DNA of 64,000 bases, taken from NCBI GenBank assembly GCA_964304625.1, contig OZ199839.1, positions 7,959,166-8,023,165 on the forward strand, written 5' to 3'. The notes below the pieces were generated by a model. It saw only the letters and a list, made by a program, of their open reading frames with translations, searched no databases and was not told where the DNA came from. This document shows, one piece after another, positions 5,359 to 52,099 of this stretch. Every line of letters starts with the position of its first letter. Position 1 is the stretch's first letter. The DNA comes from Kudoa neothunni (lineage: Eukaryota; Animalia; Cnidaria). The position numbers and the translations under genes were made by a program.

Positions 5359-8266
5359 ATGAAAAACTTTATCCACCTTTTGGGAATTTGTACTTTTCTG
5401 TCATGTATATACACATACGACTAAAAATATTACTAATAACGTATAGCCTACTTTTCTCTTATATACATGAAAACGGCCGGGGGAGGTGCTTCAAGTCCAG
5501 TTTCTACTGAAATCCCTTTAACTTATAAACTTGTAAAAGATACAAGTGGATTGAAACTTAATTTGGTACTAAGTGGAGCGGATTATACTGGAGATAATAA
5601 TTGTCATATTAAACAATCCAACAAAGATGACACAGATCTTAATGAAATTAATGCATGTGCTGGTCGTGTTGAAGGCGGAGATAATGCCAAATGTGTTTGG
5701 ACATGCTCAGGACGTGAAAATAAATTAAATTTTGACAAGTCTTCTTCTAGTGCAAAGTATATTGCCGTTTTCACACATACTGCTGCAACGACTGCTGCAG
5801 ATAAAAATAAAGGTGGAATTGTATTTGGATTAGAGCTGCGTAATTAAAGCATCAGATATTTACAGTAAATTTCACTTAGCATTATTGGTCGATCCGCAAG
5901 TTACAATAACGACAAACGGCCAAAAACTAAAACTGAGTACAAAAACTTGTAAACCGGTGAACTGTCCCATATTTTATAAGGGTGTTCAATATAAGACCGG
6001 AACAGTTAAAACAAGTTGCACTGAAAATAATGAAAGCGAAATGGAGTTTAATTTGATGATTCCACATTATGAAATGAAATGTGATAATTATCCCAGTTTC
6101 TTTTACAAACTGCAAAATAAATATACTCTACTAAACATTGGTATTTATCAACCATTATATTATGTGACCTCTATTTCGAGTGCTACAACGAAATATATGC
6201 TAAATTTTACAAATAAATTTCCTTTCGAAATATGTCTTTTCAAAATAAAAGAGGTGCCAACAACTGGCGCTAACAATGTCTACACATCAAAATGTGGTTC
6301 AACAAATAAATGCTATGCACCTTGTAATAACGTAGAACTTGAACTCACCACTCCCACGTCTATTGTTGAAATATTGATTCAAACCAGGCACGTACCAATG
6401 ACCATCAATGGCGCCGAATATCCTGGGTATATTCAGAAAAAATTCGGTAATCCAAAAACATTTTAACTTTGATAAACTTCTTATAGTTGTCACAGGAACT
6501 ACTGCTCCTACCTTATTGTCAGAACACTCATCTACTGGTGTTACGCTAAATGTTCCGTTGTTCAAGCCAGAGAAGGATCATAAATTTGAGGGATGTACAG
6601 TAAAGTATTACGAAGCAGATAAACCTGAACCAACTTCTCCTGAAGATGCGAAATGTGGGGCAACCGGTGGAGGATGTGGAACAGGATGCACTGCTTCTCT
6701 AGAGATTACAGGGCTTGGTGGTGGAAAACCATATATTCTTGAAATTGCAGCAGGCAATACCGATAGTCCTCTTAGCGGCTTAGTAGAACATATATTCTTT
6801 CGAACAGGTAATATGATACAAATAAATATTTTTTTCTTAATAAATATATAGCAAAGAAATCTGATTCTACCTTTTCTGAAACAAATCCAACAGTAACGGA
6901 TACAACTGCATCAATTAAAGCAATAGAGGATAGCGAAACACTTAACGCACAAGACAAGACTTGTGCTTACTATATAAGCCCTCATGGAAAGGATGTATAT
7001 GTGCGTGCCATATGTGAAGATAGTTATCCTTGCAGGGGTTTTTGCAAGGATTCTCAAAAAATTATTGGGTTAATGCCCGGAACTGATTATGACCTAAAGG
7101 TAGTTGCACATGAGGATTATGGAGAAAAAGAATATAAAATTACAACGAGTATATAAATAATTGACCTCGAATTATATAATTAACTTTCTTTTAAGCATTT
7201 TCAACGCTTACACTCCAATCTCAATTTTTGGAAAAAGGCTTCAAAGTGACAGGTGTACTTTCAACACCATATCCTACAGCTGTTTGTCACTATAAAGTAA
7301 ACGTAAAAAAAGGGAATGAATCAAAGTTGGTCTACCAATGCCCACCATTGGCTTCTACAACAAACATTGGCCCATCCTCTAATGCATCCAAGACTTCTAA
7401 AATAGCGATATCTAGGGCAACTAATGGACAACAACCACAGAACGTGCCGCCTCCAAATAAAAAACCAGAAATCACTCCATGCACACAACCACCATTATGC
7501 ACTGAAATTATATTCAGTGAAGGATACGAAGCAGACAAGGAATATGAAGTGTTAGTTACGGCTGTCGGCAGATCTGCAGAAACTACCATCAAAATACCCA
7601 TAAGTAATAAAAAATCTAATTCTAAATTCGTATCGTTTATATTTTAATTACATTTTTAAAATTATATACATTAATTTTTATTATACTAAACTTTAATTTA
7701 GGCCCACAGTCCATCCCCACTAATAATCCAATCAAATTAACTGTGGTGTTTACAAGAGAAGGCGAAACCATAAAAGTTAAAACTTCTCTTCCTACAGGCG
7801 TTGATGAGCAGTCGTTATGCAAATGGGAATTGAAAAATTGGGATGATCCATCCAAACCAATCGTCCAAAAATGCATGGCAACTGGTGAACAAGGTTGTTC
7901 TGTTTTTCCATCGTGCAAGGAATTTACAATTTCAAAATGTGGATAATACTAACAATTATCGTTTGATGTTGTATCATAGTACAGATAGCAATATCTCTGG
8001 TTTTGTTGAAATCCAGAAAGGTACTTGAAAAAATGTTACTGGTCATTATTTCTGATAATTTGATTAGATGATGAATCAAACAAATCCATGTAACATCAAG
8101 TTATTAAATTATAATTGATTTATTTTAGGTCAAAAAATACAATGTACTTATTGATGGAGATATCTTGTTAATCAATTATTTTAGAATTATTGCTGTAGTA
8201 GTTCCAGTGCTCATCATTGTTGTTGGTGTGGGATTCTATTTCGGATACTGGAAAAATAAAAACTAG
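5359..8266 (+). CDS. Family A type I membrane protein, copy A2 (+1 frameshift in exon 7; pseudogene or sequence error)
   Basis: Exons 5359-5404, 5447-5839, 5880-6446, 6487-6807, 6852-7148, 7196-7603, 7702-8020, 8068-8089, 8129-8143, 8185-8266; all introns GT-AG. Signal peptide MKNFIHLLGICTFLSSYFSLIYM. Exon 7 is 319 nt instead of 318 (extra A at 7934-7937). Confidence 0.87.
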
Positions 8267-9254
8267 ATTTTTATTTATGAAGAATGCTTTCACAAATTGA
8301 CGTTCGATTTAGCGACAGTATTAATATTATATCTTACGTATTAGATATCTATCAGATTTCATCATTACTTACTTTTAAATGCATAATTATTTAATTTCAT
8401 GCAAATTTATTTTTTTGGAAATTGTATTTCTATCTTTATTTTATCTCATTTAATATGGAAAAATTATAACATAATTTTTTCAATACTGCAATAATTGTAA
8501 TTCGAAATATAGTAAACTAGCGCAAACCCTGGTTCACGCTCAGGGTCTTAGCACAATTTTTTATGTAACCAATTTTTTTGTAATTTGTAGCATTTTACTA
8601 AAATATAAAGGAAAAAAAATATAGGGAGGAAAGGTTCCTTTTATTCAGTAAAATATCACAACATGAAAAAGGATCTAATTTAGTAAAGTCATTTTGATAG
8701 CGCATAAATCAGATTAATAAAAATTAGATTATCCAAGTGTAAATGCATAATGGTTCGCTCGACTATGAACTTTGAAGCTGTTGTCTCCATCAAATTCTTT
8801 TCAAAAATTTAAATTAAACGTTGTTTCATGATGTTAATACATTGGTGTATGTAATGGGACGTATTTATATTATTTCAATGTTTAATCAGAATATCAAAAT
8901 CGAATAATCAGATTATTTTATTTAATTAATTATCACATGAATCCTTAAAATTTGTTCACTTTATTTTTCCATAAGAAAAAAGAATGGGTTTATGAAAAAT
9001 ATGATTAGTCATTAACGACGCTACAAAAAATAAACCAAAATACCGTCCCCACAAAAGAATAATAGTAATCATCTAAATATAACATCATGAAATCTCATGC
9101 ACTTTGTTATGGCATATATTGAATATGACCCCGATATTATGCAGAAAAATAAAAAATAATAAATATTGGATAAGTAAATATAATTCGTTTTCATTTCAAA
9201 TGTTATTAAAATAGCCAGATAACTTTTTGTGATAAAAAATTAATTTTTACTTAA

Positions 9255-16117: not shown

Positions 16118-16562
16118 ATCTAATGGATCTCATACTTTAGATATGAAAATAATTTGTTTTACGTATACAAAATCTGTTGAACTTTATCTAAAATATTAAC
16201 TTATACAACGTAATTTTATAAAACGATCAATGCCATGAGAATCATACATCCTTGTATCATTTTGATTGTAAATACGTGGACGGGTATTATGCTGTGAAAA
16301 ATTGTTTACATTTGATTCCCTTCTGATTATTTAGAATCTATCTAATTTCCGTGATATTTCTTTCAATTAATGTTCATGGTAATAAATTACTGCCCGTCAA
16401 AATATTTGAAGGATGAATTAATACTTCCGAAATATTTGTATTTATGCTTCATTAAGTTTAAGTCGAACAATAATTCTGTGTATATATACGAATTATAATC
16501 CGATCAAATTTTGATTTTCATATTGAACGACAACTATCGTTCAATATCTTTTGCAAAATATA

Positions 16563-19478
16563 ATGAAAACCTTTATCCACCTTTGGGGAATTTTTATCTT
16601 TCTGCCGTGTATATATACGCATACAACAACCAACATTACTAATAATATATAGCTTACGTATCGCTTATAGACGCGCAACCGGCCCAGGGAGTTGCCTCAA
16701 ATACAGTTTCTACTGAAGGCCCTTTAACTTACAAACTTGTAAAAGAGACAAGTGGATTGAAGATTAATTTTATATTAAGTGGAACCGATTATACTGGAGG
16801 GAAATATTGTCATATTAAACAATCCAACAAAGATGACACAGATCTTGCCGAAATTACATCATGTCCTGGTAGTGCTGCAGATGTATCTAGTAGTAAATGT
16901 GTTTGGACATGCGATGGAATTGAAAATAAATTAACTTTTGACAAGTCTTTTTCGAGTGCAAAGTACATTGCTGTTTTTACGAATACTGCTGCTACCACCG
17001 CTGAAACGAAAAATAATAATGGGGCTGTATTTGGATTGGAATTTCGTAACTAACGCATATAATATTTTCCATCATTTTCTTTTAGCGTTGTTGGTCAATC
17101 CGCAGATTACAATAACGAAACACGACAAAAAACTAAAATTGAGCACAAAAACTTGTACACCGGTGAAATGTCCGATATTTTACAAGGATGTAAAATACCA
17201 GGAGGGAACAGTTAGGGGAAGTTGCACTGAAAATATTGAAAGTGAATTGGAGTTTAATTTGATGATTCCACATTATGAAATGAAATGCGATAATTATCCT
17301 AGTTTCTTTTATACCCTGCAAAATAAATATACTCTATTAAACATTGATATTTATCAACCACAATATTACGTGACCTCTATTTCGAGTGCTACAACGAAAT
17401 ATATGCTAAAGTTTACAAACAAATTTCCCTTCGAAATGTGTCTTTTCAGTATAAGAGATAAGTCAACGACCGAAAGTAACAATGAATACGAATCGAAATG
17501 TGGATCGGAAGGGAAAAAATGTCATGCACCTTGTAATAATGTAGAACTGGAATATACGGCTTCTAAGTCTGTTGTTGAAATATTAATTCAAACTAGGCAT
17601 GTATCGTTGGCTAAAAGTGCTAACAAATATGATGGATATATTCAGAAAAAATTCGGTATTTTATGGATATTTACTCATTTATAACCTTCTCCTAGTTGTC
17701 ACAGAAACTACCGCCACTCCATTATTGTCAACATACTCGCCTACTGGCGTTACATTAAATGTTCAGTTGTTTAAGCCAGATAGTGCACCTAGTTTTTCGA
17801 GTTGTACTTTAACTTATTATGAAGCAGACAAACCTAAACCTGCTTCTCCTGAAATCCGAAATGTGAAGATGACAGTCAAACCTGTAGAACAGAGTGCACT
17901 ACTGCTCTAAAGATTACCGAGCTTTCTAATGGAAAACCATATATTCTTGAAATTGCAGCAGGAAATGGTAATGATATTCCTGCTAATTTTAAAGAACATA
18001 TATTTTTTCGAACAGGTAATATAATATAAAAAAAAATTTTTTAATAAATATATAGAAAAGAAACCTGGTTTTATCTATTCAACGACAACTCCGACAGTAA
18101 CGGATACAACTGCATCAATTAGAGCAATAGATAATAGCGAAGCACTCAACGCACAAGACAAGACTTGTGCTTACTATATAAGCCCTCATGGAAAGGATGT
18201 ATATGTATGTGCCATGTGCGAAGATAGTTATCCTTGCAGAGGTTTTTGCAAGGATTCTCAAAAAATTATTGGGTTAATGCCTGGAACTGATTATGACCTA
18301 AAGATAGTTGCACATGAGGATTATGGAGAAAAAAAACACAAAATTACAACGAGTATATAAATAATTGACCTCGAATTATATAATTAACTTTCTTTTAAGC
18401 ATTTTCAACGCTCACACTAAAATCGGAATTTATAGACAAAGGCTTTAAGGTGATAGGTGTACTGTCAACACCATATTCTACAGCTGTTTGTCACTATAAA
18501 GTAAACGTAAAAAAAGGGAATGAATCCAAGTTGGTCTACCAATGCCCACCATTGGCTTCTACAACAAACACTGGCCCATCCTCTAATGCACCCAAGACTT
18601 CTAAAATAGCGATATCTAGGGCAACTAATGGGCAACGACCACAGAATGTGCCTCCTCCAAATAAAAAAACAGAAATCACTCCATGCGCACAACCACCATT
18701 ATGCACTGAAATTATATTCAGTGAAGGATACGAAGCAGACAAGGAATATGAAGTTTTAGTTACTGCCGTCGGTAGATCGGCAGAAACTACCATCGAAATA
18801 CCCATAAGTAATAAAACATCTAATTCTAAATTCATATCTTTTATATTTTAATTAAATTTTTAAAATTATTAAAAATATGTACATTAATTCTTATTATACT
18901 AAATTTTAATTTAGATCCACAACCTTCCTCCAATAAGAATCCAATCAAATTAACTGTGGTGTTTACAAGAGAAGGCGATAACATAAAAGTTAAAACTTCT
19001 CTTCCTACAGGCGTTGATGAACAGTCGTTATGCAAATGGGAATTGAAAAATTGGGATAATCCATCCAAACCAATCGTCCAAAAATGCATGGCAACTGGTG
19101 AACAAGGTTGTTCTGTTTTTCCATCGTGCAAGGAATTTACAATTTCCAATGTGGATAATACCAACAATTACCGTTTGATGTTATACCATAGTACCAATAA
19201 CAATATCTCTGGTTTTGTCGAGATCCAGAAAGGTAATTGATTAAATATTATTTGTCATTATTTCTTATATTTTGATTAGATGATGAATCAAACAAATCCA
19301 TGTAAACTAAAATTGTTAAATTCTAATTTATTTATTTTAGGTCGAAAAATACTATGTACTTATTGATGGAGATATTTTATTAATCAACTATTTTAGAATT
19401 ATTGCTGTAGTAGTTCCAGTTCTCATCATCGTTGTGGGTGCGGGATTCTATTTCGGATACTGGAAAAATAAAAACTAG
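16563..19478 (+). pseudogene. Family A type I membrane protein, copy A3 (-1 frameshift in exon 4)
   Basis: Exons 16563-16608, 16653-17045, 17086-17655, 17696-18015, 18056-18352, 18400-18807, 18915-19232, 19280-19301, 19341-19355, 19397-19478. Exon 4 is 320 nt instead of 321 (GAA-ATCCG at about 17853). The gene is otherwise intact, so this may be a sequence error. Confidence 0.8.
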
Positions 19479-19777
19479 ATTTTTATTTATGAATAATGCT
19501 TTCACAAATTGACTTACTGTTTAGCGACAGTACTAATATTATATCATATGTATTAGTAATCCATCAGATTTCTTCATTACTTACTTTTAAATTCATAATT
19601 ATTTAGTTTCATGAAAATTTATTTATTCGGAAATTGTATTTCTCTATTTTTTAATAAGGGAAATTAATATGATTTTTTCATGATATGAATACTTTATTTA
19701 ATAGTAATAATCAACCTTTTTGGATGTATTATTTTATCTTATTACTAGTTAGTTGCAAATCCTGATATCCGTTAACC

Positions 19778-21142
19778 CAGGGATTCTCAACCGGGGCAAA
19801 ATATAAATGATATGGGGTAAATTAAATGACATCAAAATTAGGCAGGGTGAATTTTTGCATTATGGATTTGTGACGTATTTCCAGACTTCTCACGAATTAT
19901 ATTATTCAGGGAAATTAAACTCAATAAGAATTGGGAAAAAATTCTTAAATTATTTTTAGGAATAAGTTCTTAACATTTATTTATAAAATTATTCCCAGTC
20001 CTTTTTAACGCCTCGTTTATCTTTTAGTGGTGTAGCTTAATAATAATACTTAAAATGACTATTCTCATGATAAATAATATTCAAGTGTCGTTAGTTTTGA
20101 CTATTTTTAATTATTTCTAGTCCGTAAGAGCGAAGGATTGGGGAATAATTAATTTGATTTAGCAATATCTAAAGAATAAAATCTGTATACAGATTGTGGG
20201 TGAGTTGATGGGATTAAAAATTGTCATTATGCAAGCATACGTGTTTTTTAGGACCAGAATTTACCCCTCAAATAAACTCTGTTGTATCTGAACGAGTACA
20301 AAACCTCAAGGCGGCGTTTCTCAATTTTTTTATCGCGCCCCACTTCTTAAAAAGAAGTTAAGCATCTAATCTCTTTCAAAAGTATTGATTTTTTACTTAA
20401 ACTGACGATAATTTTGAATAAAACTTCCAACCACATAAAAATTTGAAAGCAATTAATATTTACATCTTATCTCATTAAAATTAAAATGTATTCGATCAGA
20501 TCTGATTTAATTTATCGATGGACCTAATAAATGAACATCTTTAGTTGTTCATTCCGTCCAAAACAGCATCAAGTGAGACTCGTGGAAATCCAACCTTCAT
20601 TAAGAAATACTTTGGTGTATACAGAGCTAATGGGCCGAAAATAAATAGTATAAATACAAAATCAATCAATATTATATAGGTTTAATCAAAAAAATGGATA
20701 TATGATTCTAAATGAGACAAGATTGAGGTTTAAACCATTCTGATTCTATTCGGATAAGAGCACGTTAAATATTTTTATTCATTTGTATATAATTGATCAT
20801 TGCATTTCATATTTTTTATGATATTAATCGCCACTCAATAATCAGCAATATCGAAAATCGCGATATTGGCTTTAAAGTACGTCATACTGCCAAATTATCT
20901 CACCACTATCCATGTCACACCAATACTCAGGATTTTCCGCGTTACAGCAGAGTGGTTCATTAAACATTCAAAAATTTCGATGTCACACCAAAATTTTTTC
21001 ATACCCACCGGTAGGGCGTGGAAATCACGTTGGGGAACATTGCTTTAAGGTAAATAAGGATTGAGCTTTCAAGTTAGAGGGTAATTTTAGATTTTTCATC
21101 AGACTCAAGGGGTAAATTTGAATAAATGGTTGAGAACCCCTG
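19778..21142. mobile_element. Non-autonomous hAT element
   Basis: TIRs CAGGGATTCTCAACC / GGTTGAGAACCCCTG; imperfect 8-bp TSD CGTTAACC / CCTTAACT. Confidence 0.8.
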
Positions 21143-21148
21143 CCTTAA

Positions 21149-25708: not shown

Positions 25709-26709
25709 TGAAGGGTCGTAAGCATTAAGCTTAAGAATAATATTGTCCAAATGATGGGTCGGGGACATTTGGAGAGAATCAAGAATTTTCATTCTTTGAA
25801 AGATAAAATGGATATCACGTCATATTGTAAAAGAATGTTCAATGGGAAAAACAGATAACCTAAAATCCTCAATTATTATAGCTGGACATCTCCATCCTCC
25901 TTAATATGATTTTGGGTAATGAAGAATCCATTATGATGGCTCATAATGAAATGAGAACTACAAATAACCACAAAACATTAAAAAATTAAAGTAAGGCCTC
26001 GATATAGCGGAATTAATGATTTTTCGGTGCTTTCCAACATAAAAAATTCAACAAATAACGTTAACTAGTGCGAACGGTAATGCAGGAATATCCACCTCTA
26101 AAAATCCGTCTTTTGTGCGCGCCCCCTTCTGATTTTATAATAAATCGTCTGTTTACAATTTTTAAATATGGGATGATCACAAATATCAGTTTAAAAATAT
26201 CAGTTTAAAAAATCAACCAAAATACAGCTTCGGCCATTATTGTAGCACGCGCTCAACTTTGCGCGTCCTCTTTTTTTGTTGTATTTCCCTAAGTTTCCAC
26301 ATATATAAACAACTTTGAGATGATTATTATCTCCTATCTAGTCCTGTTATAGTATTTTTGTGTAAAACCCATATCTAACTCAGTAGTAATAGATTTAGAT
26401 AATTTGTTTGAATTTAAATTAACTTTTTCCCGGACAGAATTCTAAATATTAAAAGTTTTGTTGATTAGAAATGTCAAAACCAACTAACTTTAGTTTATCT
26501 AATCTTCTTAGTAGTTTATTTTTTAATGGTGCGAGATATTGTGATATTACTATGACCATAATATTTCCTATATTTGTAATACATTAGAAACTTATGAATT
26601 ATTTAATAAATTATTGTACATGGAAAATACAATAACTGGAATGATACGTTTGTAATTGTAATAATTGCTTTTGTATAAGAAAGTTATACCATGATCTTTA
26701 GTTCTAGAC

Positions 26710-28202: not shown

Positions 28203-28208
28203 TTTTAG

Positions 28209-33599: not shown

Positions 33600-36466
33600 C
33601 TAGTTTTTATTTTTCCAGTATCCGAAATAGAATCCCACACCAACAACAATGATGAGCACTGGAACTACTACAGCAATAATTCTAAAATAGTTGATTAACA
33701 AGATATCATTATCAATAAGTACATTGTATTTTTCGACCTAAAATAAATAAATAAGCATTCAAAAATTTTATTTTACATGGATTTATTTGATTCATCATCT
33801 AATCGAAATATCAGAAATAATGACCAATAATATTCATTCAATTACCTTTCTGGATCTCGACAAAACCAGTGATATTGTTATCCGTGCTATGATACAACAT
33901 TAAACGGTAATTGTTGGTGTTATCCACATTTGAAATTGTAAATTCCTTGCATGATGGAAAAACAGAACAACCTTGTTCACCAGTTGCCATGCATTTTTGG
34001 ACGATTGGTTTGGTTGGATCATCCCAATTTTTCAATTCCCATTTGCATAACGACTGTTCATCAACGCCTGTAGGAAGAGAAGTTTTAACTTTTATGTTAT
34101 CGCCTTCTCTTGTAAACACCACAGTTAATTTGATTGGATTATTAGTGGCGGTAGGCTGTGGATCTAAATTAAAATTTAATTAAAATATGAACGATATGAA
34201 TTTAGAATTAGATGTTTTATTACTTATGGGTACTTGGATGGTAGTTTCTGCAGATCTGCCAACAGCCGTAACTAAAACTTCATATTCCTTGTCTGCTTCG
34301 TATCCTTCCTTGAATATAATTTCAGTGCATAATGGCGGTTGTGCACATGGAGTGATTTCTTTTTTTTTATTTGAAGATGGCACATTCTGTGGTTGCTGTC
34401 TATTAGTTGCCCTAGATACCGTTATTTTAGATGGTTTAGATACGGAAGAAGGTGTCCCAATCTTTGTTGTAGAAGTCGGTGGTGGGCACTGATAGACCAA
34501 TTCGGATTCTTGCCCTTTTTTTACGTTTACTTTATAGTGACAAAAAGCTGTAGGATATGGTGTTGACAGTACACCTGTCACTTTGAAGCCTTTTTCTATA
34601 AATTCCGATTGTAGTGTGAGCGTTGACAAAGCTTGGAACAATATTAGATATATAATTCGAGATCAATTATTTATATACTCGTTGTAATTTTGTATTCTTT
34701 TTCTCCATAATCCTTATGTGCAACAACCTTTAGGTCATATTCAGTTCCAGGCATTAACCCAATAATTTTTTGAGAATCCTTGCAAAAACCCCTGCAAGGA
34801 TAACTATCTTCGCACATTGCACACACATATCCATCCTTTCCATGAGGGCTTATGTAGTAAGCACAAGTTTTGTCGGATTTTGTGATTGTTCCGCTTTCTC
34901 CTATTGCTTTAATTGATGCAGTTGTATCCGTTACTGTTGGAGTTGTTTCAGAAAAGGTTGGACCAGATTTCTTTGCTATATATTTATTTTAAACAATATT
35001 TTTTTCGATTATATTACCTGTTCGAAAGAATATATGTTCTTTAAAATCATTAGACATACCATTCGAATTCGGGGCTGCAATTTTAAGAATATATGGTTTT
35101 CCACTATCCAATCCTGTAATCGTAAATGCAGCACCACAATTCGCCTCACAGTCTATTTGGCCAGTTCCGCATTTTGCCTTTGCATCAACTGCAGGTTTAG
35201 GTTTGTCTGCCTCATAAAAAGTTACAGTACAAGTAGCAAATCTAGGTTCATTTTCTGGTTGAAAAAACGGAACATGTAGCTTAACACCAGTAAGTGAGTG
35301 TGTTGACAATAAGGTAGGATCGGCAGATTCTGTGATAACTATAAGAAGAATATAAATAAATAAAGCTTCATGTAATACCAAATTTTTTCTGAACATATCC
35401 GTCAAACGTGACGTCATTGATGGTCAATGGTAGATGTCTAGTTTGAATCAATATTTCAACAATAGATTTGGAGTCTTCAAATACGAGCTCAACATTATTA
35501 CAAGGTGCATAACATTTATTCGTCGATCCACACACTGATTTGTATTCATTGTTACTTGCGGATGCTAACACTTCTCTTACACTGAAAAGACATATTTCAA
35601 ACGGAAATTTGTTTGTAAACTTTAGCATATACTTTGTCTTCACATTCGAACTATAGGTCACGTAATATTGTGGCTGATAAACATCAAAATTTAATAGGGT
35701 GTATTTATTTTGTAGGTTGTAAAAGAAGCTGGGATAATTATCGCATTTCATTTCGTAATGTGGAATCATCAAGTTAAACTCCATTTCACTTTCAATATTT
35801 GTAATGCCACTTCCCCCAGTTGTTCCCTCATCATATTTCACGCCCTTGTAAAATATGGGACATTTCACCGAGTTACAAGTTTTGGTGCTAAATTTCAGTT
35901 TTTGGTCTTTTTTTGTTATTGTAACTTCCGGATTGACCAATAATGCTAAGTGAAATTTACTGTAAATATCTGATGCTTCAATTACGCAACTCTAATCCAA
36001 ATACAACCCCACGATTATTTTTTGCTGCAGCGGTTGCTGCTGTATTATCCGTAAAAACGGCAATATACTTTGTTTTCGGAGAAAACTTGTCAAAACCAAG
36101 CTTATTTCCACTTCTTGAGCATGCCCAAACACATTGGTTAGTATTTGTTCCTTCAACATCACCAGGGCATTCGTTAATTTCAACAAGGTCAGTGTTTTCA
36201 GTATTAGATTTTTTGATATGGCAATTTTTCCCCGAAACATAATTATTTCCACCTAATATCAAATTAACCTCTAATTGATTATTCTGTTTCAAAAGTTTGT
36301 ATTTTAAAGTATTTTCAGTATCAGCTGAATTTGGAGCATCTCGTTGGGCCACTTCTGTACTCATGAGCGGAGTGGAGGCTATATATAATTAGTTATATTT
36401 TTTGTGATTTTTATATATACATGAGAGGAAAGTGAAAATTCCTAAAAGGTAGACAAAGTCTTTCAT
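33600..36466 (-). CDS. Family A type I membrane protein, copy A4 (intact, about 822 aa)
   Basis: Minus-strand exons 36466-36421, 36378-35986, 35945-35379, 35338-35018, 34975-34679, 34631-34224, 34163-33846, 33798-33777, 33737-33723, 33681-33600. These give an open 2469-nt frame from signal peptide to TM and WKNKN*. Confidence 0.9.
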
Positions 36467-37145
36467 TATATTTTGCAAAAGATAAAAACGATAGCTGTCG
36501 TTCAATATGAAACTCAAAAAGTTGATCGGATTATAATTCATATATTATATGTATACCCAGAATTAATGTTCGTCTTTAAACCAATGAAGCATCAATGCAA
36601 ATATTCCGGAAATACTAATTCATCTTAACAATTATTTTGACGGACAGTAATTTATTATCCTGAATATTAATTTAAAGTAATATTACGAAAATGAGAAACA
36701 TTCATAATATCAGAAGGAAATCCAACCTCAACTTTATCCCACACCATATATATCCATTCACACATTTCCAATAAAAAAGAAGAGAGGATATAATGTTTCC
36801 ATGAAATTGATAATTTTATTAAGTTTCGTAATCTTGGGAAATATTTTAAACAAAGTTCGATTGTTTTTGTGTACGTAAAAAATGTCTTGTCAATTCCAAC
36901 GTATAGGCTCCATTAGATTATAAAGTAACTCAAACGTTAAATTCTACAAAATTTATTTTCTTAAAAAGGGTAAAATTAATCTTCCTTTTATGTATAACCG
37001 GTAAGACAATTTTATATAAATCTATTAGAATATTCATAAAAAGCGTACTAAAAATTTGAACAAATATCTGTCCCCGAGCTTTTTTGAATATCTTATGAAA
37101 TATTTTGTAGCATAATAATTTTTTACTTGTTGATGATTATTAATT

Positions 37146-43367: not shown

Positions 43368-43827
43368 TGGATAGTAGATAGATTAATGTTTTTTTAATAT
43401 AACAACAAGTATTTAAACATATAGTATGTTTATTTATTTGTAACAACTTTAGTACAAAAATTATACTTTTTAAAATATTCAACCTAAATATAAGAAAATC
43501 AATCATTTAATTCAGGGATAAAATAAAATATATCCACACTAGGATAATATATAGCACCAGTTAGAAAATTTATGTTTTTATTAAAATTTTTAAATGAGGC
43601 AAACATTATTACTTCGTTAAATTATTTTTGCTTATAATTGTTTCATTAATTTTGGAGGTTCTGACAATATATAAATTCATTATTTTCCATCGGTTGTCAT
43701 GAAGATCTAATTTTCTTAATTAAATACGTTACGCAAAGTCAAAAATATGCTCAAAACATGCAGATACAAATTTATGTGCAATTCTATGTTATTTAAAATT
43801 ATTCATTGACAACTTTTTTTTAAATTA

Positions 43828-46076
43828 CCCCTCCGATGACATGGGGTAGAATCTACCCCAATGCAATTTTAAAATTCATATATCTCCTTATGTTGGAAAT
43901 GTTGGAATTTAAAATTCTATGCATTCCTGTAACATACATTTATTTTTAATTTTAGTCGAAAATATTTTTTAAATACTATATATTAAAAAATTTATTACAG
44001 GTTTCTCTCCTAAAGTACTTTGGGTTAGAAATTACCCTATCTATTCTTTTACGTTTAAATTAAAAAAAAATATAAAAAACTCTTTTAATTCATATATATA
44101 TATATATATATATATAATGTTTTTATAGGCACAATTGAAATAAATTTACATATCTCACGTCAGTTCATTGTGGTTTAATCTGCTCCATTAATAATTCATT
44201 ATAAATCTGTATGACGTAATTGTATATCAGGGTTAGACGCATTCAAGTAATTAAATATAGTTTTCGGAAAAAACATTAATTTTGGGGAATATTTATTTTG
44301 AACAATCTAAATAACTGTTTGAAGAATGTATTGGACAATAAAATTTGTAGCATTTATGGCACTATCTTGTAATTTTTGTCATTCTCTCGAGGAAAAACCT
44401 AACATCGTGCACTTTTTATGTTTACAGGTGGTTCCAGATGGGAAATATTTGCTTTACTGAGATTCCTTTTTGCTGGTACATGGGTAGAATGTTTGGCCAA
44501 CAATAGTTTATATAGTTGCTCTGCAATCTCTCTTAAGAAGGTTCTTCCATTATTCGATTCACCAAATATTTCTTTATACAATGCAAAAACACCCACCAAT
44601 GACAAGTCGACTATGCTAAAGAATACGAATAGGAGCCATCTCCTTGTAAATCAACGAACAAAAACCGATGCAAGCATCCTGTCGACGTTATCTACGCCGC
44701 CCTTAGTTTTATTATAATCCAATATTAATTGAGGTTTGAACTTAAGGTATTCTCCAGCAACATGATAATTCTGTTGCTGGAAGTTAGAAGAATCACGAAT
44801 TTACCTTTTTTTCCACATATGATAACAACATATATTTATCGTGAAACAAAAAAATGATGGAATAAAGAGGCCTTTTTCTTGAAGGTTGAAGACAAGGTGG
44901 CACCTCATTTTTGTTTTTTCACACTGCTCCCAACAACTGCAACTTTCTTTCCAACAATTTCCCCGCAAGAGGCATCGATGTGAAGAAATTATCCGCGAGA
45001 ACATTTCGGCCGTAATCAAACAAATGAGTTGTAAGGTTGAGTACGATGTTTTTACCTATGTTAGTTTGTTTGTTTGTCTCAGAATTATTGTTTCCCAAGT
45101 AAACGCTGGCATTACAAACGTGATTGGCGATTGGATCAACCAGTAGAAAAAATTCTTACCATAGTTTGCCGGCATTATGGGCATATACTGTTGGAAACGA
45201 CATCTTCCCCGGAACGGAACCAATTGTTCATCGACGGTAACATCCTCGTTCGGAGAAAAATATTTAGGTAGCATTTCAACCCACTTCTCCCATATATCAC
45301 GAATGGCACAGAATTTGTCCAACTTTTTACATTCTACTCGTGTATTACAGTTATCGAAATGCATTGCTAGGGAAATATGTTTGAAGCGCCGAAGCGAAAA
45401 TGATTGCCGATAGATTTCTCTTCCTTCCTTCTAACTGAACAACTCACCTATATGCTCCTCTCTATCCTTATGGATAGGTATGAAAATTGACAATCGTAAA
45501 CATCCCCTAATTTCTATCAAATCAAGATCGTACCATTGGTCGCCGAAATGAAGTTTTCCAAACATATTTGTAAACAAAACGATTTCGTTACTTATTTCAT
45601 AATTTTAAAATAACAAAAAACGGTCCAGTATGCTTTTTATTTTTGTTTGAGCGTAAGCAGTAGGTCCTGGGAGTGGATACATTTTACTCTCCAAACCTTT
45701 CTTTGTTGGACGAGGCTTCGAAGCGCTCCATTGAATACTATCTTTACTCGTAAGAACGTCAATACCAATGTCGATTATTTCCATTTCGTCTGAAAATTTT
45801 TCATCTTCGGAAAGTGAGCGTGGAGGTCACTTTCCGAAGAACAGAATTCATCGTACAAATCATCCGAGCCGCTCATTGAAAAAATACACGCTCGCGCCAA
45901 CAATAAATATATCACTTTATCGTGTGGTTAAAACTAAATCTGCCGGCTTGAAATCTGTTAGATTCTAATTTATAAAACTTTGTAATATGTTTCGTATTTT
46001 AAACGAAAAAAGTAGTTGGCGTATTTTTTTCCCCAAAATACTTTACACGTACATTGTTTTTGTCATCATCAAAAGG
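43828..46076 (-). mobile_element. Decayed piggyBac element
   Basis: Minus-strand pieces 45056-45364 (DKFCAIRDIW..VTVDEQLVPFRGRC) and 44399-44605. Degenerate ends CCCCTCCGATGACA ... TGTCATCATCAAAAGG|TTAA. Confidence 0.82.
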
Positions 46077-46339
46077 TTAATGAACTCAGGATGATTGCAC
46101 TACCGAAAATTTATTCATCTTGAAACTTTTAAAAACTTACGAAAAATTAAGATAAGTAAATATCAGACAACACGTAAAATATGAATAAAATATAACCAGT
46201 AGTTTTAGAGATATTCATTCCTTGAGATATAGACACTTCCAAAAATAAAACCTCCTCATCTAGATACAGTCGTTTAGTTTTATTCATAAATCGATCGAAT
46301 AGGTTCAATCAAAATACTTTAAATTAAATGAATTGAACA

Positions 46340-46742
46340 GACTCAATGACAAACTTTGATTAAATAAATTATCACTAATCGACTTTTTGAGTATTGTTTG
46401 TCAGAAAAATAGTTTTCATTCCATCGGAAAACATACCGTATCTCTATTTTAACCAAATCTGATTAACGATTTCCGGAAAGAGTATTTTCTTTTGCTGGAA
46501 CTATCCAAACCATCAGATGAAATAGAAATTGTACTCTACATTAGGTGCCCTTATTCGAATGAGGAAATTTTTCAACACATCGACAAAATTTTTGTTATAA
46601 CTTTGAAGTTTTTGAGTCAATTATAAATTTAAATAATGTATATATAATTAAATATTATTTCGATTGTTGAAAAAAATTCTGATTTGTCCGATTTTGCCCG
46701 GCAAAAATTTGGCCGCATGTCCAATCTGGGTTGACAACGCTG
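46340..46742. repeat. Dispersed repeat, probable hAT-type element end
   Basis: Similar to about 41000-41406. Both end in GGGTTG(G/A)CAA(T/C)GCTG, the reverse complement of a CAGCGTTGCCAACC-like TIR. Confidence 0.5.
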
Positions 46743-47509
46743 TTAAATATGCCATATTAGCACCAATGTCATCAGTTAACTATTTAAATTCATCAAAAAT
46801 CTGCGTATACAAAATTATTATTCCTATGGGATTAATGAAATATTCAGCTGTAAAATATTTCATTGGATTATCAAAAGACAATGATGTAGTGATACTAGCC
46901 AAAATTTTTCTTTCCTTATTTATGAATATGTTAATAGATTGTTTTTAAATAGATTTATCAGTAAAATTTCAAGTGAAGTAAAATGTTATCCTTCTTAAGA
47001 AAATAAACTTTTTTAATTCAACATTTGAGTTATTTTGTACTCTAATGGATCCCATAATTTAGAGACGACAATGAATGGTTTTACGAGTCCAAAACCTGTT
47101 GAATTTTATTAAAAAGCTTACCAAAGATTACATAATTTAACAAAATTGTCAAGGTCAAGGAAAAAATGAATCCTCTTTTCTTTTTGTTTGAAAATAGGTG
47201 AATGGAAATATATGGTGTGGAATAAAGTTTAGGTCGGATTTCCTTCTGATTATTAAGAATGTATTTAATTTCCGTGATATTCCTTTAAATTAATATTCGG
47301 GGTAATAAATTACTATCCATCAAAACATTTGTTGAGATGAATTAATATTTCCGAAATATTTGTATTGATGCTTCATTAGGTTTAAGGCGAACATTAATTC
47401 ATATATATATATATATATATATAAATATACATATATGAATTATAATCCGATAAAATTTTTGAGTTTCATATTGAACGACAACTATCGTTTTTGTCTTTTG
47501 CAAAATATA

Positions 47510-50428
47510 ATGAAAGCTTTTGTCTACCTTATGGGAATTTGTTCTTTATTATCATGTATATATCCAACTTCCAAAGAAATATTAATAATAACTTATAGCC
47601 CCTTATTTGCTTATATACACTCAAGGAGGTCAGGAAGATTCTCAAAATCCAGTTATTACTGAAGACTCTCTAACTTACAAACTTGTAAAAGCAGATAGTG
47701 ATTTTAAGGTTAATTTAATATTAAATGGAAATGGCTATCGCCCGGAGAAAAAGTGTCATATCAAAAAATCTAATGATGAAGAAACGAATCTTGTTGAAAT
47801 AAGCGAATGCACTGGTAATAATCTCAGCACGGATAATAGCAAATGTGTTTGGACATGCTCAGTAAGTGAAAATAAGCTTGGTTTTGACAAGTTTCCTCCG
47901 AGGACAAAGTATGTTGCCGTCTTTACGGATAATGAAGCAGGAACTGCAGAAACAAAAAATAGTGGTGGGGCTGTATTTGGATTAGAGTTTCGTAATTAAA
48001 GCATCTAGTATATTCAGTAAATTTTCTCTAGCATTATTGATCAATCCGCGAGTTACAATAACAAAGGAGGACAAAAAACTGAAATTTAGCACAAAAACTC
48101 GTAACTCGGTGAAATGTCCCGTATTTTACAAGGATGTGGAATTTAAAGAAGGAACATCTGGAAATACCTGCAATCATAATTGTGAAAGGGAAATGGAGTT
48201 TAATTTGATGATTCCATATTATGAAATGAAATGCGATAATTATCCTAGTTTGTTTTACAACCTGCAAAATAAATACACCCTATTAAATTTTGATGTTTAT
48301 CAACCACAATATTACGTGACCTATAGTTCGAGTGAGCCAACGAAATATATGCTAAAGTTTACAAACAAATTTCCATTTGAAATGTGTCTTTTCAGTATAA
48401 GAGATCCGTTAACAGAAATTACAGAGGCAACTACCGACGATTACACATCTAAATGTGGTTCGACAGGGAAAAAATGTTATGCACCATGTAATAATGTTGA
48501 ACTTGAGTTTTCGGCTTCCATTTCTGTTGTTGAAATATTGATTCAAACCAGGCACGTATCGTTGGTTAAAAGTGGCATCAAATATAGTGGATATATTCAG
48601 AAAAAATATGGTAATCCAAAAACATTTTAACTATGATGATCTTCTTGTAGTTGTCATTGAAACTACTGCTCCTACCTTATTGTCGGAACATTCATCTACT
48701 GGTGTTAAGTTAAATGTTCCCTTGTTTCAATCACAAACTAGTGTTAAATTTTCTGGATGTACTGTAACTTATTATGAAGCAGATAAACCTAAACCTGCTT
48801 CTGCTCCAACGGCAAAATGCGGAGGCGCCAATCAAGATTGTGATGCAACGTGCACTCCCGCTCTAACGATTACAGAACTTGGAAGTGGAAAACCATATAT
48901 TCTTGAAATTGCAGCAGGCAATACCGCTAATCCTCCTCAAGATTTCAAAGAACATATATTCTTTCGAACAGGTAATTAATAGAAAACAAATATTTTTCAA
49001 AATAGGTGTATAGAGAAAAAAGGCACTTCTACCTTTTCGGAAACAAAACCAATTGTGAAGGATACAAATGCATCAATCAAAGCAATAGATGTAATTGGTA
49101 CAATTACACATGAAGACAAAACTTGTGCTTACTATATAAGCCCTCATGGAAAGGATGTATATGTGTGTGCCATATGTGAAGATAGTTATCCTTGTAGGGG
49201 TTTTTGTAAGGATTCTCAAAAAATTATTGGGTTAATGCCCGGAACCGAATATGACCTAAAGATAGTTGCACATGAGGATTATGGAGAAAAAAAACATAAA
49301 ATTACAACGAGTATATAAATAATTGACCTCGAATTAAATAACTAATTATGTTTCAAGCATTTTCAACGCTCATACTACAATCGGAATTTATAGAAAAGGG
49401 CTTCAAAGTGACAGGTGTACTTTCAACACCACATCCTACAGCTGTTTGTCAATATAAAGTAAAAGTAAAGAAAGGGCAAGAATCCAAATTGGTCTATCAG
49501 TGCCCACCACCAGCTTCTACAACAAACACTGGCCCATCCTCCAATGCACCAAAAACTTCTAAAATAGCACTAGCTAGGACAACTAATGGACAACAACCAC
49601 AGAACGTGCCGCCTTTAAATAAAAAAACCGGAATCACCCCATGCACACAACCTCCATTGTGCACTGATATTATATTCAATGAAGGATACGAAGAAGACAA
49701 GGAATATATAGTTTTGGTTACGGTTGTCGGCAGATCTGCAGAAACTACCATCAAAATACCCATAAGTAATAAAACATCTAATTCATATCGTCTTACTTTG
49801 GTTGAGTTTTTAAAATTATTAAAGATATGTACATTAATTATTATTATACTAAATTTTAATTTAGATCCACAACCTTCCTCCAATAAGAATCCAATCAAAT
49901 TAACTGTGGTGTTTACAAGAGAAGGCGAAAACATAAAAGTTAAAACTTCTCTTCCTACAGGCGTTGATGAACAGTCATTATGTAAATGGGAATTGAAAAA
50001 TTGGGATGATCCATCCAAACCAATCGTCCAAAAATGCATGGCAACTGGTGAACAAGGTTGTTCAGCTTTTCCATCATGCAAGGAATTTTCAATTTCAAAT
50101 GTGGATAATACCAACAATTACCGTTTGAAGTTATACCATAGTACCAATAACAATATCTCTGGTTTTGTCGAGATCCAGAAAGGTAATTGATTAAATATTA
50201 TTTGTCATTATTTCTTATATTTTGATTAGATGACGAATCAAACAAATCCATGTAACATCAACTTGTTAAATTATAATTGATTTATTTTAGGTCAAAAAAT
50301 ACTATGTAATTATTGATGGAGATATTTTATTAATCAACTATTTTAGAATTATTGCTGTAGTAGTTCCAGTTCTCATCATCGTTGTGGGTGCGGGATTCTA
50401 TTTCGGATACTGGAAAAATAAAAACTAG
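47510..50428 (+). CDS. Family A type I membrane protein, copy A5 (intact, about 826 aa)
   Basis: Exons 47510-47555, 47599-47991, 48032-48610, 48651-48971, 49014-49310, 49358-49765, 49865-50182, 50230-50251, 50291-50305, 50347-50428, giving an open 2481-nt frame. FN3-type motif GLMPGTEYDLKIVA; TM IIIAVVVPVLIIVVGAGFYFGYW. Confidence 0.9.
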
Positions 50429-52093: not shown

Positions 52094-52099
52094 CCTTAA

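What the first reader, a model, noticed from the sequence alone, without database searches (positions are those of the whole stretch)
5447..48971. Family A paralogues are patchworks of each other (segmental gene conversion)
The nearest neighbour switches every 50-200 bp. Exon 2 core: A2+A3 (HIKQSNKDDTDL) vs A4+A5 (HIKKSN, LGFDKF). Intron 2: A2 is almost identical to A4, while A3 differs. Mid exon 3: A2+A3 (TSISSATTKY) vs A4+A5 (NFDVYQPQYYVTYSS). Late exon 3: A2+A4 (CGSTNKCY, P[ML]TIN) vs A3+A5 (MCLFSIRD, GKKC, HVSL.KS). Intron 3 and start of exon 4: A2+A5 (GTAATCCAAAAACATTTTAACT; TTAPTLLSEHSSTGV). Exon 6: A2+A3 vs A1+A5 (KTGIT, CTDIIFNEG). A single duplication tree cannot produce this. Inference: short-tract conversion shuffles variable loops combinatorially, even with the inverted copy A4.
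Basis: partly seen in the sequence, partly recalled or inferred. Interest (0 to 1): 0.85.

Follow-up and report, generated by a model that had tools for sequence, protein, structure and literature searches.

The report
Patchwork surface-protein genes in Kudoa
Five neighbouring copies of an undescribed membrane-protein gene, in what is almost certainly the tuna-muscle parasite Kudoa neothunni, are real patchworks made by repeated copying of short stretches between sister genes of one 220-kb cluster; the process is well known, but this gene family and animal lineage are new for it.

Summary
A single tree is rejected by three tests: PHI with 0 of 1000 permutations, AU tests, and split-support heterogeneity with 0 of 5000 permutations.

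The cause is non-allelic gene conversion.
- Introns and synonymous sites carry the same mosaic.
- 83-91% of the bases that differ between young duplicates also occur in other copies.
- A5 and its duplication partner show 1 difference in 3.6 kb upstream but about 450 inside the family unit.
- Identical runs of 80 bp or more occur 93 times among cluster copies and never with dispersed copies.
- Inverted copies take part.

- Donors are mostly the ten other cluster copies outside the window, several of them pseudogenes.
- Recent tracts (median about 100 bp, longest 645 bp in a gene) lie mainly in the conserved membrane-proximal half.
- Flanking DNA is converted too, so nothing targets the loops.

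The genome matches the published K. neothunni assembly. The family has at least 150 exon-3 matches and appears in no paper I found. The scan reported the same pattern on other DNA of this genome (s1-682530, s1-682521). Single-read confirmation was not possible.

The parts
1..1100 (+). Family A copy A1, 3' part only: end of exon 6, exons 7-9 at 297-614, 662-683 and 723-860. The rest lies upstream of the window in L002.
   Evidence: Exon 5, outside the window, has a 1-bp insertion in a T run.
4914..8516 (+). Family A copy A2. Exons: 5359-5404, 5447-5839, 5880-6446, 6487-6807, 6852-7148, 7196-7603, 7702-8020, 8068-8089, 8129-8266. Introns are 40-98 bp with GT..AG. All domain exons are phase 1-1. 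Exon 7 has a 1-bp insertion at 7934.
   Evidence: The model encodes a signal peptide, six ectodomain exons, a transmembrane helix and a 6-residue tail.
16118..19775 (+). Family A copy A3. The coding sequence spans 16563-19478. Exon 4 has a 1-bp deletion at about 17854.
33299..37145 (-). Family A copy A4, inverted. The coding sequence spans 36466-33600. Exons 2-7 are open.
47041..50725 (+). Family A copy A5. The coding sequence spans 47510-50428. Exons 2-7 are open.
49079..49723 (+). 645-bp tract of A5 (exon 5, intron 5, exon 6) identical to copy L016, which lies 43.5 kb away. It is flanked on both sides by sequence that differs by 7-37 bases per 100.
   Evidence: It spans 296 consecutive concordant polymorphic sites, with global permutation P = 0.
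48758..49078 (+). Tract of A5 covering the variable part of exon 4, intron 4 and the start of exon 5. It is 98% identical to copy L010 (136 kb away), and 48864-48966 is identical.
33646..33986 (-). Two tracts of the inverted copy A4 (188 and 151 bp) identical to the plus-strand copy L008.
   Evidence: This is exchange between copies in opposite orientation.
34592..34691 (-). 100-bp tract of A4 identical to the plus-strand copy L007. Within 87 bp of it (A2 co-ordinates 7135-7221) A4's closest relative L017 differs at 9 sites.
18938..19057 (+). 120-bp tract of A3 identical to the inverted copy A4 (window 34021-34140).
19526..20943 (+). 1418-bp block just downstream of A3, identical to 50476-51893 downstream of A5. 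It lies inside a 15.7-kb duplicated cassette that is otherwise 70-99% identical.
43541..47152 (+). 3.6 kb upstream of A5 with a single difference from its duplication partner, which lies 43.5 kb downstream outside the window. Differences start 112 bp inside the family-A homology unit.
16119..32058 (+). The A3 cassette: the A gene, about 10 kb of spacer and a family-B gene. It is duplicated at 47041-61828 and again about 82 kb downstream, outside the window.

Best explanation
Family A is a lineage-specific family of type I membrane proteins. Each gene has a signal peptide, six ectodomain exons (all phase 1-1), a Ser/Thr/Pro-rich stalk, one transmembrane helix and a 6-residue tail. The genome matches the published Kudoa neothunni (Myxozoa) assembly.

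Fifteen copies lie in a 220-kb cluster built by nested segmental duplications. Within that cluster, short stretches of DNA are repeatedly copied from one paralogue into another by non-allelic, homology-dependent, mostly non-crossover gene conversion. This happens in either orientation and includes pseudogene copies.

Supported tracts are tens to hundreds of bp long in the genes and kilobase-scale in the flanks. Conversion is frequent enough to account for almost all differences between young duplicates.

Its net effect is twofold. It homogenises the membrane-proximal half. In the distal half it reassorts old variants, where divergence and probably selection keep tracts short and rare.

Shown: the mosaic, its restriction to the cluster, its presence at silent sites, the templated nature of the differences, and the participation of inverted and broken copies.

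Inferred: the molecular pathway, the direction of each event, and any role of the diversity in the parasite's dealings with its host.
For: 1. Conflicting genealogy along the gene.
- PHI test on the five copies: 343 informative sites, observed 0.473 against 0.500 +/- 0.003, 0 of 1000 permutations.
- PHI on 20 copies: z = -23. Exon 2 alone: z = -5.4.
- AU tests and split counts agree.
- The correlation between distance matrices of 100-bp windows falls from 0.30 to 0.00 over 2 kb. It stays near 0.33 in 20 alignments simulated on the ML tree with site rates kept in place.

2. Bounded identical tracts.
- 37 of 190 pairs have a globally significant run of concordant polymorphic sites.
- The same statistic on tree-only simulations gives 0.2 pairs on average, and a maximum score of 24 against the observed 76.

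3. Exchange at the DNA level.
- Within one pair, silent divergence swings between neighbouring introns and exons.
- A4/L017: intron 1 0.00, intron 2 0.33, intron 3 0.03.
- A5/L016: exon 6 pS 0.00, exon 4 pS 0.38, intron 3 0.40.

4. Young duplicates.
- A4/L017 have 175 of 182 differences in nine patches of 37-318 bp. The remaining 1827 bp hold 7 differences.
- A5 and its partner show 1 difference in 3.6 kb upstream and about 450 in 3.45 kb inside the family unit. The change begins 112 bp inside the unit shared by all copies.

5. Templated differences. At 83-91% of the sites that differ between such partners, both bases occur in other copies.

6. Locality control.
- Identical runs of 80 bp or more: 93 among 103 in-cluster pairs, 0 among 85 pairs with a dispersed copy. 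Mean identity is similar (0.83 against 0.80). Mann-Whitney P = 5e-17.
- PHI on the eight dispersed copies is weak (z = -2.2).

7. Orientation. Tracts join A4 (minus strand) with L008, L007 and A3 (plus strand). Same and opposite orientation do not differ (P = 0.49).
Against: - No independent molecule-level check. The only run holding the stretch is the low-coverage source sample, stored as short unitigs. Other runs with the same species label held no reads.
- For the two large divergent patches between A4 and L017 in the variable half (window 35676-35993 and 35131-35281), no copy in the assembly is closer than 86-88%. They may be composites of shorter tracts, unconverted remnants, or copies from donors absent from this assembly.
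- A copying-model path switches donor as often on recombination-free simulations. The bare number of switches therefore proves nothing.
- No GC3 gradient suggests GC-biased conversion.
- Crossover-based exchange cannot be separated from conversion for copies in direct orientation.
Confidence: 0.85

Rival explanations
1. Assembly artefact. The mosaics would be chimeras made when about 7x HiFi reads of a diploid, possibly mixed parasite population were assembled and purged. Some 'paralogues' would then be uncollapsed haplotypes.
For: - The matching published assembly was built from reads with k-mer coverage of about seven and needed haplotig purging (PMC12239612).
- Word depth of unique stretches in run X1 is 6-10.
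- Multi-kb blocks are 100% identical between units 43-50 kb apart.
- No independent reads could be laid.
Against: - The patches are 40-650 bp, far below HiFi read length, so they must be present within single reads.
- The unitigs of the source run cover all 30 bins of 46900-52400 with one difference.
- The stated assembly QV is 48.5.
- The partner units are only 89-97% identical overall and differ by indels, unlike haplotypes of a genome described as having low diversity.
- Chimeras would not be restricted to the family unit, nor be templated at 83-91% of sites.
Confidence: 0.04
2. Birth-and-death evolution with unequal crossing-over only. Hybrid genes would arise from duplications and deletions whose breakpoints fall inside the genes, with no non-reciprocal conversion.
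For: - The cluster is built of nested segmental duplications with different boundaries and offsets: 7.4, 11.2, 31, 43.5, 49.5 and 82 kb.
- Direct repeats can cross over unequally.
Against: - Tracts are bounded on both sides within otherwise collinear duplicates.
- There are nine patches in one 3-kb pair.
- Exchange occurs with inverted copies, where a crossover would invert the interval.
- The flanks of A5 and its partner are identical while the gene body is replaced.
Confidence: 0.07
3. No exchange. Shared motifs would arise by convergent selection on loops, or by untemplated hypermutation targeted at the gene.
For: - Local dN/dS reaches 1.0-1.3 in three windows: 5629-5718, 7582-7742 and 7713-7772. 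It is 0.95 at 5449-5508.
- About 14% of the differences between young duplicates are private to one copy.
Against: - Introns and synonymous sites show the same block pattern.
- 83-91% of differences are found in other copies.
- Non-coding flanks also show bounded identical blocks.
- Overall dN/dS is 0.26-0.62.
Confidence: 0.02

Closest known systems
Interlocus (non-allelic) gene conversion in clustered multigene families of animals, such as MHC, KIR, globin, opsin and olfactory-receptor clusters (from general knowledge)
   Same: - Short bounded tracts between paralogues in one cluster.
- Discordant trees along the gene.
- Silent sites are affected.
- Exchange is stronger between nearby copies.
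- Pseudogenes can take part.
- Homogenised and diversified parts lie side by side.
   Different: - The family is undescribed and has no Pfam domain above threshold.
- The host organism is a highly reduced cnidarian parasite.
- The rate is extreme relative to point mutation: 96% of the differences in one young pair lie in nine patches.
Segmental gene conversion in variant-antigen archives of parasites and bacteria: Trypanosoma brucei VSG mosaics, Babesia bovis ves1, Anaplasma msp2, Borrelia vlsE, Pneumocystis msg (from general knowledge)
   Same: - A large family of surface-protein genes with many pseudogenes.
- Clustered copies.
- Mosaic genes assembled from several donors.
- A conserved membrane-anchoring end and a variable distal end.
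   Different: - No expression site, no single-copy expression and no somatic switching has been shown here.
- What is seen is germline, evolutionary exchange.
- Recent tracts lie mostly in the conserved half.
- Kudoa grows inside muscle fibres, where exposure to antibody is unclear.
Trypanosoma cruzi MASP family. Only the abstract of PMC5636173 was seen, in the listing.
   Same: - A large family of genes and pseudogenes.
- Conserved ends and a mosaic variable centre built from a repertoire of short motifs.
   Different: - The protein is unrelated and belongs to a protist.
- MASP variable motifs are much shorter.
- Family A has a multi-exon domain architecture.
VSP-like and RIFIN/STEVOR-like surface families proposed in the myxozoan Sphaerospora molnari (bioRxiv 10.64898/2026.02.11.705288)
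   Same: - Lineage-specific candidate surface families of a myxozoan, discussed as a possible basis of antigenic variation. That preprint says the mechanism is unknown.
   Different: - Family A does not look Cys-rich in the exon translations and lacks the [KR]X[KR]XK[KR] C-terminal motif: its tail is YWKNKN (by eye, not counted).
- 'Gene conversion' does not occur in that preprint's text.

Membership tests
Interlocus gene conversion between paralogues | The genealogy changes along the aligned copies, and a single tree is rejected. | tested here: met
   PHI gave 0 of 1000 permutations. AU tests rejected the global tree in 6 of 19 windows. Split heterogeneity gave 0 of 5000. Distance-matrix correlation decays with separation, unlike in simulations.
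Interlocus gene conversion between paralogues | Tracts of identity are bounded on both sides by diverged sequence, beyond what rate variation gives. | tested here: met
   37 of 190 pairs are significant, against 0.2 pairs on average in tree-only simulations. Examples are the 645-bp A5/L016 tract and the 1418-bp flank block.
Interlocus gene conversion between paralogues | Silent sites (introns and synonymous positions) share the mosaic. | tested here: met
Interlocus gene conversion between paralogues | New variants in the recipient are templated, that is, present in other copies. | tested here: met
   Both bases occur in other copies at 83-91% of differing sites in four pairs.
Interlocus gene conversion between paralogues | Transfer is non-reciprocal and does not rearrange the flanks. 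| tested here: inconclusive
   Collinear, identical flanks around replaced gene bodies and exchange with inverted copies argue for it. Donor and recipient states before the event are not observable.
Interlocus gene conversion between paralogues | The mosaics are present on single DNA molecules. | not testable with these tools
   Only short unitigs of the source run were available. They reproduce 46900-52400 with one difference.
Variant-antigen archive with segmental conversion (VSG, vls, msp2, ves1 type) | A large repertoire of surface-protein genes that includes pseudogene donors. | tested here: met
   At least 150 scored exon-3 matches out of 348 candidates. Of 23 close copies, 9 are open in exons 2-7, 7 have one broken exon, and 7 are broken in two or more exons. 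Broken copies share significant tracts with open ones.
Variant-antigen archive with segmental conversion (VSG, vls, msp2, ves1 type) | A dedicated expression site, or expression of one copy at a time. | not testable with these tools
   No RNA run held the stretch. The genome paper reports that very few transcriptome reads mapped.
Variant-antigen archive with segmental conversion (VSG, vls, msp2, ves1 type) | Conversion happens somatically during infection and changes the expressed antigen. | not testable with these tools
   This needs long reads from several parasite clones or time points.
Fibronectin type III domain proteins | A match to Pfam fn3 or a related model above the curated threshold, or a confident FN3 fold. 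| tested here: not met
   Exon 5 scores 15 bits against fn3 (cut-off 25) and 21 bits against FN3_DSCAM-DSCAML_C (cut-off 39). A profile search of the PDB gives titin and fibronectin only at E = 0.02-0.5. AlphaFold models have pLDDT 54 and 43 and are all-beta but unreliable.
Giardia-type VSPs (as proposed for S. molnari) | More than 10% Cys with many CXXC or CXC motifs, and a conserved basic C-terminal motif. | tested here: not met
   By eye, the exon translations carry few Cys and I saw only one CXXC. This was not counted. The tail reads YWKNKN.

The most novel reading that the evidence does not exclude
The family of at least 150 members would be the variant-antigen repertoire of a metazoan parasite. 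It would be a germline archive of intact genes and pseudogenes from which mosaic surface proteins are assembled by segmental gene conversion. That conversion might also occur somatically during growth in the fish, giving myxozoans a VSG/vls-like system that has not been described in any animal.
Probability: 0.1. Interest if true: 0.85.

Novelty: new member of a known kind. Interest (0 to 1): 0.5.

Why it matters
Myxozoans are extremely reduced cnidarian parasites. The matching genome paper reports 5,316 predicted proteins. Within the library I searched, no paper describes this family. The genome paper contains no text on gene families, paralogues or surface proteins.

A family with at least 150 exon-3 matches would be one of the parasite's largest. 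Its annotation rested on homology hints, and 46% of the genome was called repetitive, so the family may have been under-annotated.

A 2026 preprint states that antigenic variation has been observed in some myxozoans but that its molecular basis is unknown. A clustered surface-protein family that is rich in pseudogenes and undergoing conversion is a concrete candidate to test.

For genome evolution, the cluster offers an unusually clean measurement. Conversion swamps point mutation here: 175 of 182 differences between the closest pair lie in nine patches.

In itself, though, conversion between tandem paralogues is textbook biology. The scan has already reported the same pattern elsewhere in this genome.

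Tried and rejected
Reads
- Reads were laid on 46900-52400 from two independent Illumina DNA runs and one RNA run that carry the same species label. No read was laid. The label is evidently the host fish, so this is no test.
- The source run is stored only as short unitigs, so single-read confirmation failed.
- A loose end of that run, checked in the genome, matched another paralogue and was uninformative.

Homology of the protein
- A word-index search with exon 3 alone found nothing, but that search is limited by query length.
- The Atlas look-up gave no usable hit.
- A profile search of 1.84 billion representatives gave 15 hits. The best 14 are 123-398 aa. The six checked are unnamed singletons from ENA or Logan assemblies. 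The weakest hit is a bacterial hypothetical protein.

Fold
- Two AlphaFold models (exons 3 and 5) were too poor to search with.

Statistics that did not discriminate
- The number of donor switches in a copying-model path is equally high without recombination.
- GC3 per exon shows no gradient that would indicate GC-biased conversion.

Identifying the organism
- A cox1 fragment search gave only unnamed relatives at 70-74% identity.
- Identity was instead inferred from matches to PMC12239612:
  - genome size 40.26 Mb against 40.2 Mb;
  - three chromosomes plus a circular mitochondrial genome;
  - GC about 30%;
  - introns of about 45 bp;
  - read depth of about 7.
- The mitochondrial genome looks myxozoan: 18.2 kb, no tRNA genes found, TGA inside cox1.
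- Nuclear-receptor genes are present and nematode cuticle-collagen and fungal Zn-cluster domains are absent.
- These rest.

Spliced model
- No spliced, joined gene model was given to any search tool. All searches were exon by exon, by reference.
- In one script the A2 exons were concatenated only to check length and frame. The sequence was neither printed nor saved.

Full report
WHAT IS THERE

The window is G000:C2:7959166-8023165 of a 40.26-Mb genome with three chromosomes and an 18.2-kb fourth contig. It holds five copies of a 3.5-kb unit:
- A1: the tail only, window 1 to about 1100. The rest was fetched as L002.
- A2: 4914-8516.
- A3: 16118-19775.
- A4: 33299-37145, inverted.
- A5: 47041-50725.

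I derived a nine-exon model for A2 from stop-free frames, conserved GT..AG sites in 23 aligned copies, and a relative in another sample in which exons 2 and 3 are continuous (P0003). These rest.
- Exons: 5359-5404, 5447-5839, 5880-6446, 6487-6807, 6852-7148, 7196-7603, 7702-8020, 8068-8089, 8129-8266.
- Introns are 40-98 bp.
- The six ectodomain exons are all phase 1-1 and multiples of three.

The product is a type I membrane protein: a signal peptide, six exon-sized modules, a Ser/Thr/Pro-rich stretch, one transmembrane helix and a six-residue tail.

The fold is unresolved.
- Pfam gives only sub-threshold FN3 matches for exon 5.
- A PDB profile search gives titin and fibronectin at E = 0.02-0.5.
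- Two AlphaFold models are all-beta but unreliable, with pLDDT 54 and 43.

I therefore do not file the protein under FN3.

No spliced, joined model was handed to any search tool. All searches were made exon by exon, by reference. One script concatenated the A2 exons only to check length and frame.

THE ORGANISM

The genome is metazoan: it has three nuclear-receptor zinc-finger hits. It lacks nematode cuticle collagen and fungal Zn-cluster domains.

The small contig is mitochondrial.
- It encodes a very divergent cox1 with eight in-frame TGA codons.
- ARAGORN and Rfam find no tRNA genes on it.

Several figures match the Kudoa neothunni assembly of PMC12239612:
- Size, three chromosomes and a circular mitochondrial genome.
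- GC of about 30% and introns of about 45 bp.
- Unique-sequence depth of 6-10 in the only run that holds the stretch.

That assembly is described as 40.2 Mb, three chromosome scaffolds, GC 30.41%, median intron 49 bp, HiFi k-mer coverage about seven, recovered from yellowfin-tuna reads. The identification is an inference from these matches, not a sequence identity test.

It also explains why other runs with the same species label hold no read of the stretch: the label is that of the host.

THE OBSERVATION

The intron statements hold as well.

In 100-bp windows the closest pair among the five keeps changing:
- A1-A3 are 94-96% identical at A2 positions 6660-6960.
- A1-A5 are 98% identical at 7359-7459.
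- A3-A5 are 98-100% identical at the 3' end.

They are strongly heterogeneous among segments: chi-square 496 against 217 +/- 20 in permutations, 0 of 5000. Each half is also significant on its own.

PHI is significant in every cluster subset tested:
- Five copies: z = -8 and z = -17.
- The 5' half: z = -10.
- The 3' half: z = -12.
- Twenty copies: z = -23.
- Exon 2 alone: z = -5.4.

With the 15 possible five-taxon trees, the overall best tree is rejected by the AU test in 6 of 19 overlapping 300-bp windows. Seven topologies are best somewhere. The refutation criterion 'one topology fits all windows' therefore fails.

WIDENING THE SET

The genome holds many more copies. I aligned 23 copies with at least 74% identity. 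Fifteen of them lie in one cluster at C2:7.955-8.170 Mb.

For most segments of A1-A5 the nearest relative is a cluster copy outside the window. Examples:
- A4 is 100% identical to L017 over several stretches, but closest to L008, L006 or L007 in others.
- A5 is 100% identical to L016 over 645 bp, 99% to L010 just upstream of that, and closest to A3 at the 3' end.

The ML tree of the 23 copies is star-like with weak internal support.

A GENECONV-type test scores the longest run of concordant polymorphic sites, weighted by pair divergence, against site permutation. It finds 37 of 190 pairs globally significant.

The same statistic was applied to 20 alignments simulated on the ML tree with the site rates kept in place. 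It gives 0.2 significant pairs on average, and a maximum score of 24 against the observed 76.

The correlation between pairwise-distance matrices of 100-bp windows decays from 0.30 at 100 bp to 0.15 at 0.7-1 kb and 0.00 at 2 kb. It is flat at 0.33 in the simulations.

The number of donor switches in a copying-model path is not informative, because simulations switch as often. The significant perfect tracts range from 55 to 643 bp, most of them between about 90 and 260 bp. The identical runs of 80 bp or more have a median of 103 bp.

WHY GENE CONVERSION

1. Silent sites carry the mosaic.
   - A4/L017: intron differences of 0.00, 0.33, 0.03 and 0.00 in introns 1-4.
   - A5/L016: exon 6 pS 0.00 against exon 4 pS 0.38 and intron 3 0.40.

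2. Young duplicates differ almost only in patches.
   - A4/L017 have 175 of 182 differences in nine patches of 37-318 bp, and 7 differences in the other 1827 bp.

3. A5 and its duplication partner, 43.5 kb downstream, differ at one position in 3.6 kb upstream (43541-47152).
   - They differ at about 450 positions inside the family unit.
   - The change begins 112 bp inside the unit shared by all copies.
   - Only sequence that has other templates in the genome has been replaced.

4. At 83-91% of the sites that differ in four such pairs, both bases occur in other copies. This argues against untemplated mutation.

5. Locality.
   - Identical runs of 80 bp or more occur 93 times among 103 in-cluster pairs.
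   - They never occur among 85 pairs that include a dispersed copy, although mean identity is similar at 0.83 and 0.80.
   - Purifying selection on conserved parts would act on dispersed copies too.
   - PHI among the dispersed copies alone is weak, at z = -2.2.

6. Orientation does not matter.
   - The minus-strand copy A4 shares identical tracts with the plus-strand copies L008 (188 and 151 bp), L007 (100 bp) and A3 (120 bp).
   - This favours non-crossover transfer.

7. Non-genic DNA of the duplicated cassettes is affected too.
   - The 15.7-kb A3 and A5 cassettes vary between 70% and 100% identity in blocks.
   - One identical block of 1418 bp starts 48 bp after the stop codons.

Recent tracts are concentrated in the conserved, membrane-proximal half.
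- Positions 6955-8340 have 4-17 pairs per position in an identical run.
- Positions 5900-6950 have about 0.4-1.
- Exon 2 has none.

The dominant recent effect is therefore homogenisation of the stalk. This agrees with the fall of silent divergence from dS about 0.5 in exons 2-5 to about 0.2 in exon 7.

A few recent tracts do cover variable stretches:
- A5/L010 at window 48758-49078.
- L010/L018, 352 bp across late exon 3, intron 3 and early exon 4.
- A5/L018, 55 bp in exon 2.

The 5' half is significantly mosaic overall. Reassortment of variable segments is thus real, but older or rarer than homogenisation.

For the two large divergent patches between A4 and L017 in the variable half, no copy in the assembly is closer than 86-88%. 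They may be composites, unconverted remnants, or copies from donors missing in this assembly.

dN/dS is 0.26-0.62 per exon, with three short windows at 1.0-1.3 and one at 0.95. This is compatible with relaxed or weakly diversifying selection, not with strong positive selection.

PSEUDOGENES

Of the 23 close copies:
- Nine are open in exons 2-7. A4 and A5 are among them.
- Seven have one broken exon.
- Seven are broken in two or more exons. L003, L005, L014 and L018 are broken in five or six exons. L020 is broken in three. L006 and L008 are broken in two.

A1, A2 and A3 each carry one 1-bp length change in a short homopolymer. These lie in A1 exon 5 (outside the window), A2 at 7934, and A3 near 17854. 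Given a stated assembly QV of 48.5 they are probably real, but low read depth leaves some doubt.

Broken copies share significant tracts with open ones, for example L010 with L018, and L003, L005, L006 and L008 with A1-A4.

SIZE AND DISTRIBUTION OF THE FAMILY

A profile of exon 3 matches at least 150 places (all that were scored, of 348 candidates) at E below 1e-40, in clusters on all three chromosomes.

Outside this genome, a search of 1.84 billion representative proteins finds 15 hits.
- The best 14 are 123-398 aa long.
- The six I checked are unnamed singletons from ENA or Logan assemblies, presumably other infected samples.
- The weakest hit is a bacterial hypothetical protein.

The genome paper has no text on gene families, paralogues or surface proteins. 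My literature searches found no description of this family.

A 2026 preprint on Sphaerospora molnari proposes other candidate surface families. It states that the mechanism of myxozoan antigenic variation is unknown.

LIMITS

The decisive read-level test was not possible.
- The source run is available only as short unitigs. These reproduce 46900-52400 with one difference but are not independent of the assembly.
- The other runs do not contain the parasite.

I rate assembly chimerism as unlikely because the patches are far shorter than HiFi reads, are confined to the family unit, and are templated.

The direction of individual events, the share of crossover-based exchange between direct copies, expression of the copies, and any role in host interaction remain unknown.

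EARLIER NOTES OF THE SCAN

Several first-stage notes, and two follow-up reports on other pieces of this genome (s1-682530, s1-682521), describe the same kind of patchwork and name Kudoa neothunni. They agree with the present result but are not independent evidence.

VERDICT

The interpretation, segmental gene conversion including the inverted copy, is supported with the corrections above. It is a new member of a well-known kind of process, in an undescribed and very large gene family of a myxozoan.

Noticed in passing
window 7934; window about 17854; L002:3140: A2 (exon 7), A3 (exon 4) and A1 (exon 5) each carry one 1-bp length change in a short A or T run that breaks the frame. A4 and A5 are open in exons 2-7. 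The changes could be real recent inactivations or low-coverage HiFi homopolymer errors.
   Followed up: partly
window 25004-25372: A 122-aa ORF lies inside the duplicated cassette, in a block that is 98-99.6% identical between the A3 and A5 cassettes. From memory it resembles an IS1595/Merlin-type DDE transposase. No family search was run.
   Followed up: no
window 11501-11779 and 12918-13198: An inverted repeat of about 280 bp at 87-89% identity with 1.1-1.3 kb between the arms lies between A2 and A3. It may be the ends of a transposon or foldback element.
   Followed up: no
G000, all three chromosomes: The exon-3 module of family A matches at least 150 places (348 candidates) at E below 1e-40. 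They lie in many clusters, for example C3:0.86-0.95 Mb, C3:4.57-4.93 Mb, C2:9.80-9.87 Mb and C1:16.3-16.9 Mb. This is a superfamily far larger than the A and B families of this window.
   Followed up: partly
L023:67-1068 (Logan contig of another sample): A relative from another sequencing sample encodes the exon 2 and exon 3 modules in one open frame. Intron 2 is therefore absent there.
   Followed up: no
G000:C4 (L024-L026): The 18.2-kb mitochondrial contig has no tRNA gene detectable by ARAGORN and no Rfam match. Its cox1 has eight in-frame TGA codons. A 4.2-kb piece of it has 42% GC, above the nuclear 30%. The nearest cox1 fragments in public data are only 70-74% identical.
   Followed up: partly
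window 64672 onward into L027-L033 (C2:8.023-8.093 Mb): The cluster has a higher-order period of about 49.5 kb: 32849-76066 corresponds to 82227-125675 in extended window co-ordinates. It includes a 3.7-kb block at 100% identity upstream of copies L008 and L006. One 200-N gap lies in this stretch.
   Followed up: partly
window 40914-41408 and 46241-46744: A weak direct repeat of about 500 bp (73% identity) lies upstream of A5. It was not examined.
   Followed up: no
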